Below are positions 23,013-42,507 of a stretch of 64,000 nt of DNA, in pieces; positions within the stretch are counted from its first letter, which is position 1, and the number at the start of each line of letters is the position of its first letter. A model generated the notes under the pieces. It made no database searches. It saw only the letters and a program-made list of their open reading frames with translations, and had not been told where the DNA came from. The translations under genes and the position numbers were made by a program. The DNA lies in IMG/VR virus record IMGVR_UViG_3300040801_002079, positions 1 to 64,000 of that record, one strand, 5' to 3'.

Positions 23013-23089
23013 GCGGGTGTAGCTCAATTTGGTGGAGCGCAACCTTGCCAAGGTTGAGGCTGTGGGTTCGAGTCCCATCACCCGCTCCA
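23013..23089 (+). tRNA. tRNA-Gly(GCC)
   Basis: Full cloverleaf: acceptor GCGGGTG/CACCCGC, anticodon arm CAACC-TTGCCAA-GGTTG, TTCGAGT loop, encoded CCA. Confidence 0.95.
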
Positions 23090-23942: not shown

Positions 23943-24028
<86 letters not shown>

Positions 24029-25859: not shown

Positions 25860-26339
25860 ATGAATGAAGAATTAGAGTATCGTGGATACGTCTTTGTGAA
25901 TTCCGCATTATCATCCATTCAGAAGGGTGTACAGGGTGCACATGCTATGGTTGAAGTTACAAACCGCTATAATTATAGCTCTGTTACATATGACGAAGTA
26001 CCGGCAGCATCCGCACGAGTTGTTTGGGACTGGAGAAATGAACATAAAACCCTTATTTTCCTAGAAGCTGGGTTTCATCGTGGGTTGCTGGAAAACTACT
26101 TGACGTTTGCACAACACTGTGAGAAGCTTGGTTTACCGTATGCTTTGTTTGTTGAGGATGATGATACCATGAACAGTATGGCAACTGCATTTGCAGGGGT
26201 TGTGCCCAGCAGCATTTACGATATCGACTTAAACGAATATGATATGGTTAAGAGTACCCCCGGTATGTTTATGGAAGTAGATGATCCGGATGATGTAGCA
26301 CTTTGCCGCTTTTTAAAGCAATTCCACTTAGCGAGATAA
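25860..26339 (+). CDS. Putative peptidyl-tRNA hydrolase 2 (PTH2)-like fold protein
   Basis: LSSIQKGVQGAHA...W...KTLIFL...PYALFVED...TAFA parallels the PTH2 layout. Confidence 0.45.
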   Translation: MNEELEYRGYVFVNSALSSIQKGVQGAHAMVEVTNRYNYSSVTYDEVPAASARVVWDWRNEHKTLIFLEAGFHRGLLENYLTFAQHCEKLGLPYALFVEDDDTMNSMATAFAGVVPSSIYDIDLNEYDMVKSTPGMFMEVDDPDDVALCRFLKQFHLAR

Positions 26340-26342
26340 TAT

Positions 26343-27515
26343 ATGAAAATAAACTCAGGAGAGTACTACGATTTTGACGATGTAATGATTCGTCCTCAGT
26401 TATCGAATAAGTCTATCAATTCACGAGACGATGTTTCATTGGTGCGTCCCTTCTCTAAAAATGATAGTAGACCGTATGAATGGAGTGGTGTACCCATAAT
26501 TGCAGCCAATATGGACACCGTTGGAACTATGGAAATGGCTGAAGTTTTAATGCAATACAATTGCTGCACCGCCCTTCATAAACATTATACTGTTACTGAA
26601 ATGGTTGAATTTTTTCGAAAACACGCTGAACAGGAACATTTATTATTTTATACGATGGGAATTAACGGGGACTCTGTTGAAAAGTTTTCAGAATTTACGT
26701 CTGAATACGGAATGCCGAAAAACATTTGCATTGATGTAGCTAATGGATATGCCCCCAGATTTATCGAATTTGTATCACGAGTCAGGGATATGGCACCCGA
26801 TTCTATCATTATGGCAGGCAACGTGGTCACAGGAGACGTTACACACGCTTTAATTATGGCAGGAGCTTCCATCATTAAGGTAGGCATTGGAAGCGGCTCA
26901 GCGTGTCTCACACGGCGTGTGACGGGCGTTGGCTCTCCACAGCTATCAGCAGTCATGGAATGTGCTAACGTGGCACACGGGATGAATGCGCTCGTCTGCT
27001 CGGATGGTGGATGTGTATATCCCGGTGATGTGTCTAAAGCCTTCGGCGGTGGAGCAGATTTTGTCATGCTGGGAGGTATGCTTTCGGGACACGATGAGTG
27101 TAATGGTTCTTTAATCTATGAAGACGGAAGTGAATATGAAACCAGAGAGGATTATTTGGAAAGTATCAAAATGAAAGCCGATTTTTATAGATTAGCTAAT
27201 AAATCAATGGGGGATATGTCCCAATTTCTAGGAGAGTTGGCTGAACCAGTGGGCATGAAGTTTTATGGCATGTCATCCAATACTGCCATGGAAAAACATA
27301 ATGGCGGTATGGCAAAATATAAAGCTAGTGAGGGCAGGACATTGAAAGTTCCATATAAGGGTCCCGTTTCAAACACCATTGAGGAAATTTTAGGCGGTGT
27401 AAGAAGTACAATGACTTATGTTGGAGCAATGGAACTCAAGGAACTATCAAAGTGCGTCCAGTTTATCCCCCACAGTAGACAGCTAAATACCAGTTTAGTA
27501 AAATACGAATCATAA
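26343..27515 (+). CDS. guaC: GMP reductase
   Basis: PIIAANMDTVGT, CIDVANGY, AGNVVT, KVGIGSGSACLTR, SDGGC, FYGMSS, ASEG, GGVRSTMTYVGA. Confidence 0.93.
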   Translation: MKINSGEYYDFDDVMIRPQLSNKSINSRDDVSLVRPFSKNDSRPYEWSGVPIIAANMDTVGTMEMAEVLMQYNCCTALHKHYTVTEMVEFFRKHAEQEHLLFYTMGINGDSVEKFSEFTSEYGMPKNICIDVANGYAPRFIEFVSRVRDMAPDSIIMAGNVVTGDVTHALIMAGASIIKVGIGSGSACLTRRVTGVGSPQLSAVMECANVAHGMNALVCSDGGCVYPGDVSKAFGGGADFVMLGGMLSGHDECNGSLIYEDGSEYETREDYLESIKMKADFYRLANKSMGDMSQFLGELAEPVGMKFYGMSSNTAMEKHNGGMAKYKASEGRTLKVPYKGPVSNTIEEILGGVRSTMTYVGAMELKELSKCVQFIPHSRQLNTSLVKYES

Positions 27516-38711: not shown

Positions 38712-38738
38712 AAAAAAGCCCCGATTTCTCGGGGCTTT
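38712..38738 (-). terminator. Intrinsic terminator of the TROVE/vWA gene
   Basis: AAAGCCCCGA/TCGGGGCTTT stem with U tract on - strand. Confidence 0.8.
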
Positions 38739-38748
38739 CGTTTGCCCA

Positions 38749-40221
38749 TCAAAGGGTTACAGACTTATATCTTTCGGAATTTAGAACCTCAAGCATTAGC
38801 TCGTATGGTCCAATAAATTCTCCAGTCATAAGTGACTGCAAGATTGATGGTGAGAATCCAGAAACGTTCTGGAATCCCCGCTCGTCCATGCTCATTGGGA
38901 ACTGCACATTACGTGCATTAACATTCCAGAATACAAGCTTGGGCATTTCGTATCCAGCACGGCTGAACTTGTCAGCAATAGTCTGGAATAGAGTGCTATT
39001 GCTACGACTTGTGGCACCATCAAATTCCATATCGGAAATGATGTAAAGCTTGTCAAGCATTTCACTCTTTGGAACATTGTTCTTAATTGCTGCATCTAAT
39101 ACAAGATTAAACACGGCTTCAATGTTCGTATTCATGTCCCAACTTGCTCTCCAGAGATTGTTAACCTTCTCCACAATGTTGGCACCCTTAAGCTCCTGTA
39201 GCTTAGGACGATTGCTAAAGGTAATGAAGTGATCCTTGTATGGACCCTTAGCACGTTCAGCTAAGTAAATACCCAATCCAAGGGCTACATCTCGTGGCAA
39301 TCCATCACCCATACCCATTGATCCGGATGTATCAACAACCGCGATTGAGTTTTCAGCTTCACCCGTAAAATCAGGCAAGTTGTTCCACATTGCTTCGGCA
39401 ACATTGGTATCAATATTTCCACCGCGCATGATCTTACCAACAATTTCATGAGGGTAAAGAACGGACACATTAATCTTGGCTTCACCAGTATTAACCGCGT
39501 TGATGAAGTCAGTGTAACGTGCACGGTCATGCTTAGCGAACGCATTTCGATACTTCATCATTGCGTTAGATGGAACGCGAGAATACTCAATCTCATCCCA
39601 CTGATTCGCAGAAGTCTTACGTTCGACAACATCAAGGTGCTTACGCAACTTAGACAATGCCTTGCGATATGAACGAGAATCCATACCCAATGCTTCACGG
39701 GTCTTACGTGCAAGACGCTTGGTTTCACGGCTTGACGCATTTTCAGACTTCAACCACTTTGCAAGCAATGAGATATTGTCATCTTCAAAGAAGCTGAACA
39801 TATCCTTGTTGAACTGCTTAGCAAGAGCATCATATGCGTCACGCTCAACTTCAGTTCCGTCAAGCGCATAAACATCGTCCCAACGTCCATATTCTGGAAT
39901 ATTAGAAATGTTCTTTCGCGCTGTGTCTTCTGCTAATTCCGCTAACAGCTTGTACTGGTTACGGAACGCCTCGCGCTGGCCCTGTCCTCCACGAACATCA
40001 CGGAAATAGAACATAGCCTTAAGAGCTAGTTCGGGATTTTCAGCCCATGCTCGTAAGAACATGTCCTGCTGCTTTTCAGGGCTTAACATGCGAATAGCAC
40101 CACCCTGAGAAAAGAAATCTAAAACGGCTGAATTAGTAGTTGCCTTAGCAACCGCGCCATTTTCAGTTAATGCGTAATTATCAACACCCTTAAGTGCGTT
40201 TAAGAATCGTGTAGTCATCAT
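38749..40221 (-). CDS. DUF2828-type TROVE-like + vWA protein (Ro60-related architecture)
   Basis: TENGA...LDFF, RDVRGGQGQR, YGRWDD, LAKWL, YSRVPSNAM helical region; MIDAS VDTSGSM, NTN, ISDMEFD, FWNV, SGFS. Confidence 0.85.
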   Translation of the reverse strand: MMTTRFLNALKGVDNYALTENGAVAKATTNSAVLDFFSQGGAIRMLSPEKQQDMFLRAWAENPELALKAMFYFRDVRGGQGQREAFRNQYKLLAELAEDTARKNISNIPEYGRWDDVYALDGTEVERDAYDALAKQFNKDMFSFFEDDNISLLAKWLKSENASSRETKRLARKTREALGMDSRSYRKALSKLRKHLDVVERKTSANQWDEIEYSRVPSNAMMKYRNAFAKHDRARYTDFINAVNTGEAKINVSVLYPHEIVGKIMRGGNIDTNVAEAMWNNLPDFTGEAENSIAVVDTSGSMGMGDGLPRDVALGLGIYLAERAKGPYKDHFITFSNRPKLQELKGANIVEKVNNLWRASWDMNTNIEAVFNLVLDAAIKNNVPKSEMLDKLYIISDMEFDGATSRSNSTLFQTIADKFSRAGYEMPKLVFWNVNARNVQFPMSMDERGFQNVSGFSPSILQSLMTGEFIGPYELMLEVLNSERYKSVTL

Positions 40222-40248
40222 TTTTCTCCTGTGTTAAGTTTCTACAAC

Positions 40249-40434
40249 AAGACGGCTTTTTTGCTTTTCACCATGCAGTATATTTGCTGTTACCGTCTTT
40301 AATATTACTAGGTACTTTACTAGCTTCTGTGTTTGAGACAGATTGTAAGTAGTATTGCTGTTAGTACCTAAATCTAACTAGATGCCTTTCTTCTCTTCAT
40401 TGACGTAGAATGTTATAATTGCTGTAAGCATCTA
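40249..40434 (-). ncRNA. Array of three hairpin RNA units with invariant ACAGCAA (40379-40434, 40309-40370, 40249-40299)
   Basis: Different 7-8 bp terminal stems, each self-complementary, with ACAGCAA at the same position in all three; no ORF. Confidence 0.7.
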
Positions 40435-40582
40435 AAAACTAACTTTCTTCTTTAATAAATGATGTGCATTTTGTGCTCACCGTGTAATTGATCAAGTGCC
40501 TAATTTGTCAATTTTATAAAACTATTTAGTAATCTTGCAAAAAAGTGTAAAAATTATTTTTTTACGATCTTTATGGGGAGCC

Positions 40583-40610
40583 ATTATACACATAAAACAG
40601 TGTTTGTCAA
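40583..40610 (-). promoter_or_regulatory. Consensus sigma70 promoter facing the hairpin array and TROVE gene
   Basis: TTGACA-N16-TATAAT-GGCTCCCC with A-tract upstream. Confidence 0.8.
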
Positions 40611-40645: not shown

Positions 40646-40825
40646 TTAAGCTTTTTTCTTACTCAAAAGAGATGCCGCGCCCATAGTTCTAACAGTGTTA
40701 ACATTGTCACACTCTGGACAACGAGCATCTTCAATATTTTCTAGTAGTGTGGGGTCTGCTAAAAACTTATGACCACATTTTAAACATATGAACCGATGAA
40801 GTGTTTCATTTTCCCTTAATTTCAT
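40646..40825 (-). CDS. 59-aa zinc-ribbon protein (FmdB-like), absent from the ORF track
   Basis: Hand translation MKLRENETLHRFICLKCGHKF...RCPECDN...KKKA*; two CxxC. Confidence 0.6.
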   Translation of the reverse strand: MKLRENETLHRFICLKCGHKFLADPTLLENIEDARCPECDNVNTVRTMGAASLLSKKKA

Positions 40826-41105: not shown

Positions 41106-42254
41106 TTAATGAAACATTAGGTATGTTCCTAAAACCCCCCTATGGTTCGCAGAATTATCCCCTTCTTTGGGTCTAACTATGACATTCCATTTGGGTTTAT
41201 CCCCTAGATTTTTTAGATTTTTCATCATTTCATTATATGTTAAGATTGTGTTAATATCTATTCCATAATGATCCGATAAGCGTTGTTTGAAATCCTGAAG
41301 GGCTTGCTTATTCTTAAACATCATTTTCCCTTCTTCATCCCTAACCATTTTGCGACCATCTTTTTTAATTAAATCATTAAATAAAGATTTTGGTACGACC
41401 ACGCTATGCTTTTCGTCTTCGAAGTTAATTCGCTTTTCTTCTTTATTGAGTGCACCTTTACTAAAGTTCATAATAAAATTATCTGGGGCTTTAGCCTTAA
41501 ATGCATCTGAAACTTTTGTATAAGCATAGAAGTCAACATTTGGGAATTTCTTTGCAACACGAAATGCCATATCTAAATACTGTGGACTAAAAAAATCACC
41601 GTCATCATGCCATCTAATAGCGATCCTCCCCGGCTCACCATTATCAAGGCTAGATATTTCACTAGAAAGTTTATTTTCAAATCCCTCGGGATCATTCAAT
41701 AAAAAGTTAAGAACTTGTGCGTGATTTTTGCTAGAGTCTGGGTATTGTATATACCCTCCTTTCATCGCATAACAATATAGTTTACATTCTCCTGCGCCGG
41801 GGCATGTATTAACAATAACAAATTCCCCTGTATCCTCATCTACTGCTAATCCCCTCAGAGCGGGTAGCCCTATATTATAAAATATCTGTTCTGAGCCATC
41901 ACTGTGTTTCATTTTAGAATTTTGTTTAAGAATATTATCTGGGCGAGTTGTTATTTGTTTTTTCAAATCAGCGGTATCATAGGTATTACCAGACTCGTCT
42001 TTAATTTTTATATTGCTGCCATGAACGTAAGGATTCTTAAATTTATCTCTTTTTTCTTTGCTTTTTGTCTTAATTCGATTTAAATAATCCTGCATTTCAT
42101 CTTCAGGGAAAGGGGTTGTTTGTGCTCCTAACCCTAATGGGGCCTCAGTAAGATTGTTTCTCAGAAAATCATCTAGGCTCATTACCCTTAGACCATTTTT
42201 ACGCTTTTTCTTGCCTTTTTTTATTTCATTTATTAAAATATCATTAATTTTCAT
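41106..42254 (-). CDS. GP88-family protein (radical-SAM-like Cys cluster)
   Basis: TCPGAGECKLYCYA, IRWHDDGDF, FYAYTK; start trimmed to MKINDILINE downstream of AATAAATA. Confidence 0.75.
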   Translation of the reverse strand: MKINDILINEIKKGKKKRKNGLRVMSLDDFLRNNLTEAPLGLGAQTTPFPEDEMQDYLNRIKTKSKEKRDKFKNPYVHGSNIKIKDESGNTYDTADLKKQITTRPDNILKQNSKMKHSDGSEQIFYNIGLPALRGLAVDEDTGEFVIVNTCPGAGECKLYCYAMKGGYIQYPDSSKNHAQVLNFLLNDPEGFENKLSSEISSLDNGEPGRIAIRWHDDGDFFSPQYLDMAFRVAKKFPNVDFYAYTKVSDAFKAKAPDNFIMNFSKGALNKEEKRINFEDEKHSVVVPKSLFNDLIKKDGRKMVRDEEGKMMFKNKQALQDFKQRLSDHYGIDINTILTYNEMMKNLKNLGDKPKWNVIVRPKEGDNSANHRGVLGTYLMFH

Positions 42255-42507
42255 AGTTTTTCCCCATGTCTTAATATATTTATTGATTTCAATAAACACT
42301 GATGATAAGATTATCGCAATATGGGAGTAAATTATAATGAGCAAACAATTTTTATTAGAATTTGATTATGAGGGGTGGTGTCAAGGTCCCGAGAAAATGC
42401 ATACAATGGTTCTCGTTTATGCTACTTCATTTGATGATGCAGTATTGAAATTGCGAAAAGAGTATGATATGGTTAAGAATGTGAAAAATAGGACTATAGA
42501 ATAAAAT

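What the first reader, a model, noticed from the sequence alone, without database searches (positions are those of the whole stretch)
38712..40610. Tandem ACAGCAA-hairpin RNA array co-transcribed with a Ro60-like TROVE/vWA gene: candidate new ribonucleoprotein system
Seen (- strand, in transcription order): promoter 40610-40583, then unit A TAGATGC-TT-ACAGCAA-variable-GCATCTA (40434-40379), unit B TAGGTAC-TA-ACAGCAA-variable-GTACCTA (40370-40309), unit C AAGACGG-TA-ACAGCAA-variable-CCGTCTT (40299-40249), then RBS, the DUF2828 gene and a terminator. Stem sequences differ between units but each pairs with itself (covariation). ACAGCAA starts 9 nt from the 5' end in all three, each stem is followed by GT, linkers are 8-9 nt and AT-rich, and the interiors share no obvious sequence. 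Established: Ro60/TROVE-vWA proteins bind Y RNAs, which in bacteria are often encoded next to the gene. Inference: this is a precursor cut into 50-60 nt RNAs with a constant protein-binding handle and variable cargo (Y-RNA analogue, decoy or guide), or a multivalent autoregulatory leader. It fits neither CRISPR nor the Y RNA consensus as I know it; I cannot exclude an existing Rfam entry.
Basis: partly seen in the sequence, partly recalled or inferred. Interest (0 to 1): 0.92.

Follow-up and report, generated by a model that had tools for sequence, protein, structure and literature searches.

The report
Y-RNA-like array beside phage Ro60-like gene
The three ACAGCAA hairpins are real and belong to a large, uncatalogued family of small RNAs encoded next to a divergent Ro60-like protein in many phages and gut bacteria, most likely as its Y-RNA-type partners, and many of them carry imitations of tRNA parts.

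Summary
Observation confirmed. On the minus strand, a perfect sigma-70-type promoter (40610-40583) precedes three hairpin units (40434-40379, 40370-40309, 40299-40249). Then come the 490-aa DUF2828/DUF7788 gene and a terminator.

The units are not a local oddity. Each has a 7-bp closing stem, about 2 nt, an invariant ACAGCAA, a variable interior, the stem complement and a G. The same unit lies beside homologous genes in 88 of 97 phage loci and in bacterial genomes, always on the gene's strand. A covariance model built from metagenomic copies gave 214 of 214 hits in relatives on that strand. It found only these three units in the window.

All seven stem pairs covary. The closest relative keeps the three units with compensatory stem changes. 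Rfam 15 has no match.

The protein's predicted fold matches Ro60 over its full length, but Pfam TROVE does not match. Canonical TROVE Ro60 (phage Bxz1) has tandem Y RNAs with a different handle and no ACAGCAA.

Interiors are enriched about 15-fold for anticodon-arm mimics; unit B is one. Others hold tRNA-like domains. In bacteria, 38 of 80 loci have RtcB adjacent.

Verdict: a new variant of the Ro60-Y RNA kind. Protein binding, RNA processing and function are untested.

The parts
40583..40610 (-). Sigma-70-type promoter (TTGACA, 16 nt, TATAAT)
   Evidence: 12 of 12 consensus positions. No terminator-like site lies between it and the gene.
40435..40582 (-). Roughly 140-nt leader between the promoter and unit A, with no unit in it
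   Evidence: Read. The model R1 gives no hit here. A weaker second promoter-like site lies at 40540-40511.
40379..40434 (-). Unit A. Closing stem TAGATGC/GCATCTA, TT, ACAGCAA. The interior has a 4-bp hairpin with the 7-nt loop CUACGUC.
   Evidence: 48.8 bits, E 3.8e-7. The unit is conserved in the closest relative L098, where the inner hairpin is kept through G-U changes.
40309..40370 (-). Unit B. Closing stem TAGGTAC/GTACCTA, TA, ACAGCAA. The interior is an anticodon-arm mimic: 5-bp stem UCUGU/ACAGA and 7-nt loop CUCAAAC.
   Evidence: (44.2 bits, E 2.9e-6). The closing stem carries a compensatory double change in L098.
40249..40299 (-). Unit C. Closing stem AAGACGG/CCGTCTT, TA, ACAGCAA. The interior has UGC/GCA closing an AUGGUGA-containing loop.
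   Evidence: 42.4 bits, E 6.4e-6. Compensatory stem change in L098, with the interior kept.
40226..40230 (-). Ribosome-binding site AGGAG
   Evidence: Read. It lies 4 nt before the ATG at 40221 and 7 nt before the ATG at 40218.
38749..40221 (-). Gene for a 490-aa Ro60-like protein: N-terminal helical repeat ring plus C-terminal vWA domain with MIDAS residues D297, S299 and S301
   Evidence: Pfam DUF2828 1e-42 and DUF7788 7e-53. PHROG 850 'RNA-binding protein' 1e-144. AlphaFold2 model with pLDDT 83. The Foldseek top 9 hits are all Ro60 structures.
38714..38739 (-). Intrinsic terminator: 11-bp stem followed by a T run

Best explanation
The locus is an operon for a Ro60-type ribonucleoprotein. 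One transcript from the strong promoter carries three Y-RNA-like modules and then the mRNA of a divergent Ro60-like protein (DUF2828/DUF7788).

Each module is a hairpin closed by a 7-bp stem. The stem's sequence is free to change as long as it pairs; the consensus is WAGRNNN...NNNYCUW followed by G. Just inside the stem, on the 5' strand, sits the invariant single-stranded ACAGCAA. Stem plus ACAGCAA form the constant handle. I infer that the protein binds this handle. Canonical Ro60 likewise binds GGUCCGA or GNCGAA on the 5' strand of the Y RNA stem.

The apical part is the variable cargo, and across the family it imitates parts of tRNA:
- an anticodon arm (unit B here);
- a whole tRNA-like domain;
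- a permuted T-arm/D-arm domain, as in bacterial YrlA.

I infer that host nucleases cut the precursor in the short A/U-rich linkers into RNAs of roughly 50-60 nt.

The most likely role is in the conflict over tRNA integrity during infection. The RNPs would offer tRNA look-alikes to tRNA-directed enzymes. They would act as competitive decoys for anticodon nucleases, as adaptors that bring repair or decay enzymes (RtcB, PNPase) to damaged tRNA, or both.

Shown: the anatomy, its conservation, the covariation, the strand and neighbourhood association, the protein fold, the tRNA-part mimicry and the RtcB linkage in bacteria.

Inferred: binding, processing and the decoy or adaptor function.
For: **The unit family is real and tied to the gene**
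- 88 of 97 phage loci with a homolog carry at least one unit on the gene's strand: 297 units there against 53 on the other strand. They peak within 600 nt upstream and just downstream of the gene.
- Model R1 was seeded from 37 metagenomic units. It gives 19 of 19 hits on the gene strand in independent GenBank phages (Listeria, Staphylococcus, Bacillus, Enterococcus, Mycobacterium, Felix O1).
- R1 also gives 91 of 91 on the gene strand in viral contigs and 104 of 104 in bacterial genome contigs.

**The stem is selected as RNA structure**
- All 7 pairs show changes on both sides. Pairing is 99.6-100%, against 68-76% in shuffles and about 30-47% with slid partners.
- A test with no stem pre-selection: 49% of gene-strand ACAGCAA copies have an exact 7-mer complement at spacer 2. 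Most control registers give 0-3%, the adjacent spacers 0 and 1 give 9% and 23%, and the opposite strand gives 0-4%.
- The closest relative (83% protein identity) has the same three units, with compensatory changes in stems B and C.

**The protein is Ro60-like**
- The Foldseek top 9 hits are all Ro60 or TROVE structures over about 515-570 aligned columns (E 4e-8 to 8.5e-6). After them only vWA domains match.
- HHpred gave the same result for the Listeria phage homolog (PMC12282133), and a structure comparison did so for Bas63 gp130 (PMC11482910).

**Parallel with canonical Ro60**
- Phage Bxz1 gp220 (Pfam TROVE plus vWA_Ro60) has three tandem stem-closed RNAs directly upstream, one with a T-arm and a D-arm, but with a GGCCGA-type handle.

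**tRNA mimicry in the interiors**
- Hairpins with a 7-nt loop, U at position 2 and a purine at position 6: 27 observed against 1.7 +/- 1.2 in shuffles.
- Replicated in the genome set: 29 against 2.1. Of these, 17 are exactly CU-NNN-AA against 0.17 in shuffles, and 21 of 29 have a 5-bp stem.
- 75 long units contain a T-arm.

**Functional context**
- RtcB lies within 2 kb on the same strand in 38 of 80 bacterial loci. This mirrors the Salmonella rsr-yrlBA-rtcBA operon, which is induced by cleaved tRNAs (PMC7790460).
- The gene sits inside or beside tRNA gene clusters in many phages.
- Bas63 gp130 counters the Ppl defence system (PMC11482910).
- The Listeria phage homolog is present in virions (PMC12282133).
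Against: - There are no binding, processing or expression data for these units in any phage.
- The one highly transcribed region whose coordinates the Listeria phage CKA15 study gives maps about 0.7-1.2 kb upstream of its ACAGCAA units, not onto them.
- The canonical Ro60-binding motif is absent, and no Rfam Y RNA model matches. Homology with Y RNAs is therefore not shown, only the same architecture.
- Only about one fifth of short units have a clear anticodon-arm mimic. In the window only unit B fits fully; unit A has U instead of a purine at loop position 6, and unit C is different.
- No RtcB was found in this 64-kb window.
- Another factor, for example a processing nuclease, could read the handle rather than the neighbouring protein.
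- Core variants cluster on the protein tree (19 changes against 30.7 in shuffles). That is expected from common descent alone.
Confidence: 0.65

Rival explanations
1. Same RNP, different job. The RNAs tether the Ro60-like protein to a host exoribonuclease (PNPase), as in the Deinococcus and Thermus-phage complexes. This reshapes RNA decay, and the tRNA-like heads are only docking surfaces rather than decoys.
For: This is the only experimentally established role of bacterial and phage Ro60-Y RNA (PMC4201824, PMC12135203). The protein has a full-length Ro60 fold.
Against: - It does not explain why interiors so often copy the anticodon loop consensus CU-NNN-AA with many different 'anticodons'.
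- It does not explain the RtcB and tRNA-cluster neighbourhood.
- No PNPase-binding element is defined for these RNAs.
Confidence: 0.2
2. The units form a cis-acting 5' leader. The protein binds its own mRNA at several sites to control its translation or stability.
For: In the window the units lie between the promoter and the start codon, with no terminator in between. In Vibrio phage nt-1 a lone ACAGCAA without a stem sits 20 nt before the start codon.
Against: - Units also lie downstream of the gene: Staphylococcus, Mycobacterium and Felix O1 phages.
- Units are interspersed with tRNA genes up to 3 kb away.
- They carry elaborate tRNA-like inserts.
- The canonical Ro60 locus has the same tandem layout for trans-acting Y RNAs (PMC4201824).
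Confidence: 0.07
3. The units are processing punctuation or tRNA-derived relics. They would be acceptor-stem-like hairpins that direct RNase cleavage of polycistronic tRNA/mRNA transcripts, or decaying tRNA pseudogenes, with no link to the protein.
For: The 7-bp stem, 2 nt and 3' G resemble an acceptor stem, positions 8-9 and a discriminator base. Units sit in tRNA clusters, and some are annotated as pseudo-tRNAs.
Against: - ACAGCAA is invariant and the stems are compensated across phages of Firmicutes, Actinobacteria, Proteobacteria, Campylobacter and cyanobacteria. That indicates strong selection, not decay.
- Occurrence tracks the DUF2828 gene and its strand. In the window the units lie 16 kb from the tRNA genes.
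- ARAGORN and the Rfam tRNA model do not call the window units.
Confidence: 0.05
4. The variable interiors are guides, antisense or CRISPR-like, that direct the protein to nucleic-acid targets.
For: The layout of a constant handle plus a variable segment in a tandem array superficially resembles a guide-RNA array.
Against: - The longest matches of the interiors elsewhere in the window are 10-12 nt, no better than shuffled controls (mean 11, maximum 14).
- The interiors fold on themselves into hairpins.
- There are no identical repeats and no cas-like genes nearby.
Confidence: 0.02

Closest known systems
Bacterial and phage Ro60 (Rsr)-Y RNA ribonucleoproteins: YrlA/YrlB, Yrn1/2, Thermus phage phiLo Yrl1/2 (PMC4201824, PMC12135203)
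   Same: - A ring-plus-vWA protein with small RNAs encoded within about 2 kb on the same strand, often two or three in tandem upstream and made from one precursor.
- Each RNA is closed by pairing of its 5' and 3' ends, with a conserved motif on the 5' strand next to an internal loop.
- One class has a tRNA-like (T-arm/D-arm) domain and another is a simple hairpin.
- Linkage to RtcB in bacteria.
   Different: - The protein is not detectable as TROVE by sequence (Pfam DUF2828/DUF7788; 12-18% identity to solved Ro60 structures).
- The handle is ACAGCAA after a 7-bp stem, not GGUCCGA, GNCGAA or CGAA.
- Model R1 finds nothing at the canonical Bxz1 locus, and Rfam finds nothing at these units.
- Many short units display an anticodon-arm mimic, which has not been described for Y RNAs.
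- Some units hold an unpermuted whole tRNA-like core.
Salmonella rsr-yrlBA-rtcBA RNA repair operon (PMC7790460)
   Same: In 38 of 80 bacterial loci the Ro60-like gene, the small RNAs and RtcB lie together on one strand. A ligand-sensing regulator is often next door.
   Different: - The regulator is of the WYL/WCX type, not RtcR (CARF plus AAA+).
- RtcA was not looked for.
- The phage window has the RNAs and the protein only, with no RtcB in 64 kb.
Phage tRNA gene clusters and viral tRNA-like structures
   Same: Arrays of about 50-120-nt structured RNAs with 7-bp terminal stems, short linkers and anticodon-loop or T-arm features. In many phages they share the same neighbourhood.
   Different: The window units lack D and T arms and are not called as tRNAs. 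The invariant ACAGCAA replaces the D-arm region. There is no CCA end and no aminoacylation features.
CRISPR arrays
   Same: A tandem array with a constant element and a variable element next to a protein gene.
   Different: The constant part is only 7 nt plus a stem that varies in sequence. The units are self-folding hairpins. There are no cas genes and no spacer-like matches.

Membership tests
Y RNA (Ro60-associated small RNA, YrlA/YrlB type) | Encoded close to, and on the same strand as, a Ro60-family gene | tested here: met
   In the window the units lie 27-213 nt upstream of the gene. In relatives, all 214 model hits are on the gene strand.
Y RNA (Ro60-associated small RNA, YrlA/YrlB type) | The 5' and 3' ends pair into a stem that closes an internal loop or module | tested here: met
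   A 7-bp stem with all 7 pairs covarying and 99.6-100% pairing. Unbiased register test: 49% against 0-3% in most control registers.
Y RNA (Ro60-associated small RNA, YrlA/YrlB type) | Conserved Ro60-binding motif on the 5' strand (GGUCCGA in animals; GNCGAAN0-1G or CGAA in bacteria and phages) | tested here: not met
   The invariant motif is ACAGCAA. The canonical Bxz1 locus shows GGCCGA-type motifs and gives no R1 hit.
Y RNA (Ro60-associated small RNA, YrlA/YrlB type) | At least one RNA per locus has a tRNA-like (T-arm/D-arm) domain | tested here: inconclusive
   The window units have no T-arm. Unit B has an anticodon-arm mimic. Many relatives have units with a T-arm, in permuted or tRNA order.
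Y RNA (Ro60-associated small RNA, YrlA/YrlB type) | Physically bound and stabilised by the Ro60 protein | not testable with these tools
   Needs RIP, EMSA or a northern blot in a deletion strain.
Y RNA (Ro60-associated small RNA, YrlA/YrlB type) | Match to a curated Rfam Y RNA model | tested here: not met
   No relevant Rfam 15 match up to E = 10 in the window, or at E <= 1 or the gathering score in 17 related loci.
Ro60 / TROVE protein family | Helical-repeat ring followed by a vWA domain (the Ro60 fold) | tested here: met
   AlphaFold2 model with pLDDT 83 and pTM 0.78. The Foldseek top 9 hits are all Ro60 over about 515-570 columns, TM 0.38-0.58.
Ro60 / TROVE protein family | MIDAS motif DxSxS in the vWA domain | tested here: met
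   D297, S299 and S301 are invariant in 30 homologs. They align with the Bxz1 Ro60 motif.
Ro60 / TROVE protein family | Sequence match to Pfam TROVE (PF05731) or vWA_Ro60 (PF25045) | tested here: not met
   Only DUF2828 and DUF7788 match, plus weak generic VWA hits, even at E <= 1. No PDB Ro60 hit by sequence. The positive control Bxz1 gp220 matches both families.
Rsr-Y RNA-RtcB RNA repair operon | RtcB ligase encoded adjacent on the same strand | tested here: not met
   No RtcB in the window. It is met in relatives: 38 of 80 bacterial loci and 3 phage loci, all on the same strand.
tRNA | Cloverleaf recognised by ARAGORN or the Rfam tRNA model | tested here: not met
   No call at 40249-40434.
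CRISPR array | Near-identical direct repeats separated by unique spacers, with cas genes nearby | tested here: not met
   Only the 7-nt core is identical and the stems differ. Neighbouring genes are not cas genes.

The most novel reading that the evidence does not exclude
A modular RNA display system. One protein-binding handle (closing stem plus ACAGCAA) presents interchangeable imitations of tRNA parts, as tandem arrays loaded onto a Ro60-like ring. The parts are anticodon arms of many specificities, elbow (T/D) domains or whole tRNA bodies. Phages would use it, in part delivered in the virion, as a broad decoy against anticodon nucleases and other tRNA-directed defences. Bacteria would use the same RNPs with RtcB to sense or repair cleaved tRNAs. 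If so, it would give the long-unexplained tRNA-like domain of Y RNAs a concrete function.
Probability: 0.3. Interest if true: 0.88.

Novelty: new variant of a known kind. Interest (0 to 1): 0.78.

Why it matters
Ro60 and Y RNAs are conserved from bacteria to humans, yet what Y RNAs do, and why bacterial ones imitate tRNA, is still unclear.

This protein family is very large:
- at least about 8,000 protein clusters at 90% identity;
- 710 GenBank phage records, including Felix O1, Listeria A511/P100-type, Staphylococcus, Enterococcus, Bacillus, Campylobacter, Vibrio and mycobacteriophages;
- many gut Clostridia.

It has been annotated only as 'RNA-binding protein' or DUF2828, and no partner RNA has been defined.

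A simple sequence-and-structure signature now predicts its partner RNAs in hundreds of genomes. It explains some 'pseudo-tRNA' annotations in phage genomes. It links the family to RtcB repair operons. It also shows anticodon-arm mimicry that can be tested directly with cultured phages and laboratory hosts. One homolog is already reported to counter a defence system, so the RNAs are candidates for the missing component of that counter-defence.

Tried and rejected
- **Rfam 15** on the window and 17 related loci: only tRNA, one GOLLD RNA and noise; nothing on the units.
- **Sequence searches of the protein and its profile against PDB:** no Ro60 hit. hhalign against Bxz1 Ro60 aligned only the MIDAS motif (probability 25%). 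The Ro60 link rests on the predicted fold.
- **Whole-leader folding energy:** not different from shuffles.
- **Guide hypothesis:** no match of the interiors elsewhere in the window beyond chance.
- **Listeria phage CKA15 transcription:** I hoped its 'three highly transcribed non-coding regions' were the units. The only region with published coordinates (26,236-26,727) maps to a separate roughly 500-nt RNA 0.7-1.2 kb upstream. The supplement has no TSS table.
- **Zinc-ribbon ORF upstream of the promoter:** it looked like a conserved partner because the Listeria phage also has one, but the two are not homologous and it does not recur.
- **RtcB, WYL and WCX homologs:** none in the window.
- **Core variants on the protein tree:** first-base variants (A/T/G/C-CAGCAA) cluster on the tree. 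I do not count this as evidence of RNA-protein co-evolution, because linkage and common descent explain it.
- **Literature searches** for DUF2828, ACAGCAA, YrlA plus phage, and Ro60 plus defence: no description of this RNA motif.
Full report
**1. What is there**

On the minus strand a perfect sigma-70-type promoter (40610-40583, 12 of 12 consensus positions) is followed by a leader of about 140 nt. Then come three hairpin units: A (40434-40379), B (40370-40309) and C (40299-40249).

Each unit has a 7-bp closing stem, two nucleotides (TT or TA), ACAGCAA, a 27-39-nt interior and the stem complement, and is followed by GT. The linkers are 8 and 9 nt.

AGGAG lies at 40230-40226, before the ATG codons at 40221 and 40218 of a 490-codon gene that ends at 38749. 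An 11-bp terminator follows at 38739-38714. No terminator-like site separates the units from the gene.

ACAGCAA occurs only 12 times on both strands of the window.

The window is part of a 316.8-kb viral contig, so probably a jumbo phage, with no close relative among GenBank phages.

**2. The protein**

- Pfam gives DUF2828 (1e-42) and DUF7788 (7e-53). PHROGs gives family 850, 'RNA-binding protein'.
- TROVE and vWA_Ro60 do not match even at E <= 1. Sequence and profile searches of PDB find no Ro60.
- An AlphaFold2 model built from a 30-sequence alignment (pLDDT 83, pTM 0.78) has Ro60 structures as its nine best Foldseek matches. These are the Thermus phage phiLo Ro60, Xenopus Ro60 with and without RNA, Deinococcus Rsr and a 'Trove domain' entry. 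They align over about 515-570 columns, with E from 4e-8 to 8.5e-6 and TM from 0.38 to 0.58. After them only isolated vWA domains match.
- The MIDAS motif DxSxS (D297, S299, S301) is invariant.

So this is a Ro60-like ring-plus-vWA protein that has diverged beyond sequence recognition.

The family is very large:
- about 8,000 clusters scored at E <= 1e-5;
- 710 GenBank phage records, annotated 'Ro-like RNA binding protein' in mycobacteriophages;
- more than 500 viral contigs and more than 500 bacterial genome contigs.

**3. The units are a conserved RNA family tied to this gene**

Reading the flanks of homologs showed the same unit again and again:
- three in tandem upstream in Listeria phage LMTA-34;
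- three in tandem downstream in a Staphylococcus phage and in mycobacteriophage Enceladus;
- two upstream in a Campylobacter phage;
- four to seven among the tRNA genes next to the gene in Felix O1, Enterococcus and Bacillus phages.

In 97 phage loci, 88 have at least one unit on the gene's strand (297 units against 53 on the other strand). They are concentrated within 600 nt upstream and just downstream of the gene.

The consensus is WAGRCRC, about 2 nt, ACAGCAA, a variable part, GYGYCUW, then G (87%).

A covariance model (R1) was built from 37 short units of metagenomic contigs. Its results:
- exactly the three units in the window (E 4e-7 to 6e-6);
- 19 units in independent GenBank phages;
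- 91 in viral contigs;
- 104 in bacterial genome contigs.

All 214 hits in relatives are on the gene's strand. Tandem arrays of 2-5 units with a median linker of 12 nt are common.

**4. The stem is selected as structure**

- All seven pairs show changes on both sides. Pairing is 99.6% in the seed and 100% in the independent set, against 68-76% after shuffling and about 30-47% with slid partners.
- My first scan required pairing, so I also ran a test without that requirement. Among all ACAGCAA copies on the gene strand, 49% have an exact 7-mer Watson-Crick complement 10-150 nt downstream when the 7-mer is taken at spacer 2. Most other registers give 0-3%. Spacers 0 and 1, which overlap the true stem, give 9% and 23%. 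The opposite strand gives 0-4%.
- The closest relative (83% protein identity, L098) has the same three units in the same order. Stem B changes GTAC/GTAC to GCAC/GTGC, and stem C changes ACGG/CCGT to ACAG/CTGT. Both are compensatory.
- In that relative the interior of B has diverged, while the interiors of A and C are largely kept.

**5. Relation to known Y RNAs**

The architecture is that of bacterial and phage Y RNAs (PMC4201824, PMC12135203, PMC7790460):
- the ends pair;
- a conserved motif sits on the 5' strand beside an internal loop;
- the RNA genes lie next to the Ro60 gene on the same strand, often in tandem and made from one precursor.

As a control I read the canonical locus of mycobacteriophage Bxz1. 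Its gp220 matches Pfam TROVE and vWA_Ro60. Three tandem stem-closed RNAs lie directly upstream, the middle one with a T-arm and a D-arm. Their handle is of the GGCCGA type, and R1 finds nothing within 10 kb.

So each protein branch has its own handle. Rfam 15 has no model that matches the ACAGCAA units.

The literature I could search does not describe them:
- The CKA15 Listeria phage study speculates that abundant non-coding transcripts near the homolog could be Y RNAs (PMC12282133).
- The PhageMaP preprint speculates that some 'tRNAs' next to Bas63 gp130 could be Y RNAs (PMC11482910).

**6. What the variable part carries**

Folding the interiors of 163 short units gave 45 hairpins with 7-nt loops, against 9 in shuffles. 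Of these, 27 have U at loop position 2 and a purine at position 6, against 1.7 +/- 1.2 in shuffles. Most read CU-NNN-AA on a 5-bp stem, which is the anticodon-arm consensus, and the 'anticodons' are varied.

The independent bacterial set reproduces this: 29 against 2.1, with 17 exact CU-NNN-AA against 0.17, and 21 of 29 with a 5-bp stem.

The window units:
- Unit B is of this kind (UCUGU, CUCAAAC, ACAGA).
- Unit A has a 4-bp stem with the loop CUACGUC. It is conserved in L098 but has U instead of a purine at position 6.
- Unit C carries an AUGGUGA-type loop that recurs in other phages.

Seventy-five longer units contain a T-arm. In 11 of them the order is T-arm then D-arm, as in YrlA. In 17 it is the tRNA order. 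Some of these units are annotated as pseudo-tRNAs.

The interiors have no significant match elsewhere in the window.

**7. Functional context**

- In bacterial genomes, including isolates of Ruminococcus and Eubacterium, RtcB lies within 2 kb on the same strand in 38 of 80 loci. The units sit between or before the two genes, and WYL/WCX-type regulators are next door in about 20 loci. This mirrors the Salmonella rsr-yrlBA-rtcBA operon, which is switched on by cleaved tRNAs. For that operon a decoy role of YrlA against an anticodon nuclease has been suggested (PMC7790460).
- In phages the gene is embedded in or next to tRNA clusters.
- The Listeria phage also has RtcB 1.3 kb downstream.
- The Listeria homolog is found in virions (PMC12282133).
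- Bas63 gp130 is reported as needed against the Ppl defence system (PMC11482910). I infer that gp130 is the Felix O1-type homolog; I did not check it by sequence.
- The window itself has no RtcB.

**8. Conclusion**

The best-supported reading is a Ro60-type RNP operon whose RNAs use a new handle and display tRNA-part mimics.

I put about 0.8 on 'these are partner RNAs of the Ro60-like protein'. I put about 0.3 on the specific decoy role. A PNPase-tether role is the main alternative.

Binding, processing and function are inferences. The decisive experiments are simple and can be done with cultured phages in laboratory hosts.

Noticed in passing
L003:1591-2036: A GOLLD RNA (Rfam RF02032, 198.8 bits, E 1e-54) lies about 1 kb upstream of the Ro60-like gene in a 179-kb viral contig, between a tRNA and two ACAGCAA units. 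Large ornate RNAs, tRNAs and this RNP may share a neighbourhood.
   Followed up: no
L014:930-1500 (Listeria phage LMTA-34; corresponds to CKA15 positions 26,236-26,727): A roughly 500-nt non-coding region with its own consensus promoter lies about 1 kb upstream of the units. It is reported as the most highly transcribed region of phage CKA15 (PMC12282133). It has no Rfam match at gathering score and no ACAGCAA unit.
   Followed up: partly
L158:42-1785 and about 20 other bacterial loci: WYL-domain and WCX-domain proteins are encoded next to the units, the Ro60-like gene and RtcB in Clostridia. They are possibly the ligand-sensing regulator of this operon, in place of RtcR.
   Followed up: partly
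L017:2440-2500 (Vibrio phage nt-1): This T4-like phage has the protein gene but no stem-closed unit in the 2.5-kb flanks. A single ACAGCAA without a stem sits about 20 nt before the start codon.
   Followed up: no
L020:4363-4472; L021:483-549; L011:2153-2242: Features annotated as 'tRNA-Undet' or 'tRNA-Pseudo' lie in the same tRNA clusters as the units. The one in Synechococcus phage B23 overlaps a scan-detected unit-like hairpin (L020:4408-4539). Some pseudo-tRNA calls in phage genomes may be these RNAs.
   Followed up: partly
window 40646-40825 (-): A 59-aa zinc-ribbon protein (CxxC...CxxC, weak Zn_ribbon_8 match) is encoded just upstream of the promoter. Listeria phage LMTA-34 also has a small zinc-finger ORF in that position, but the two are not homologous and it does not recur in other loci.
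   Followed up: yes
window 23013-23089 and 23943-24028 (+): These are the only tRNA genes in the window (Gly-GCC, Leu-TAG). They lie 16 kb from the units and on the other strand, unlike in many relatives where units and tRNAs are interleaved.
   Followed up: no
window 41106-42344 (-) and L098:2626-3786: A GP88-domain protein is the upstream neighbour of the operon in the window but the downstream neighbour in the closest relative. The operon has moved relative to it.
   Followed up: no
L007:2135-2215: A partial tmRNA-like match (42 bits, below the gathering score of 47) lies in the tRNA/unit cluster upstream of the homolog.
   Followed up: no
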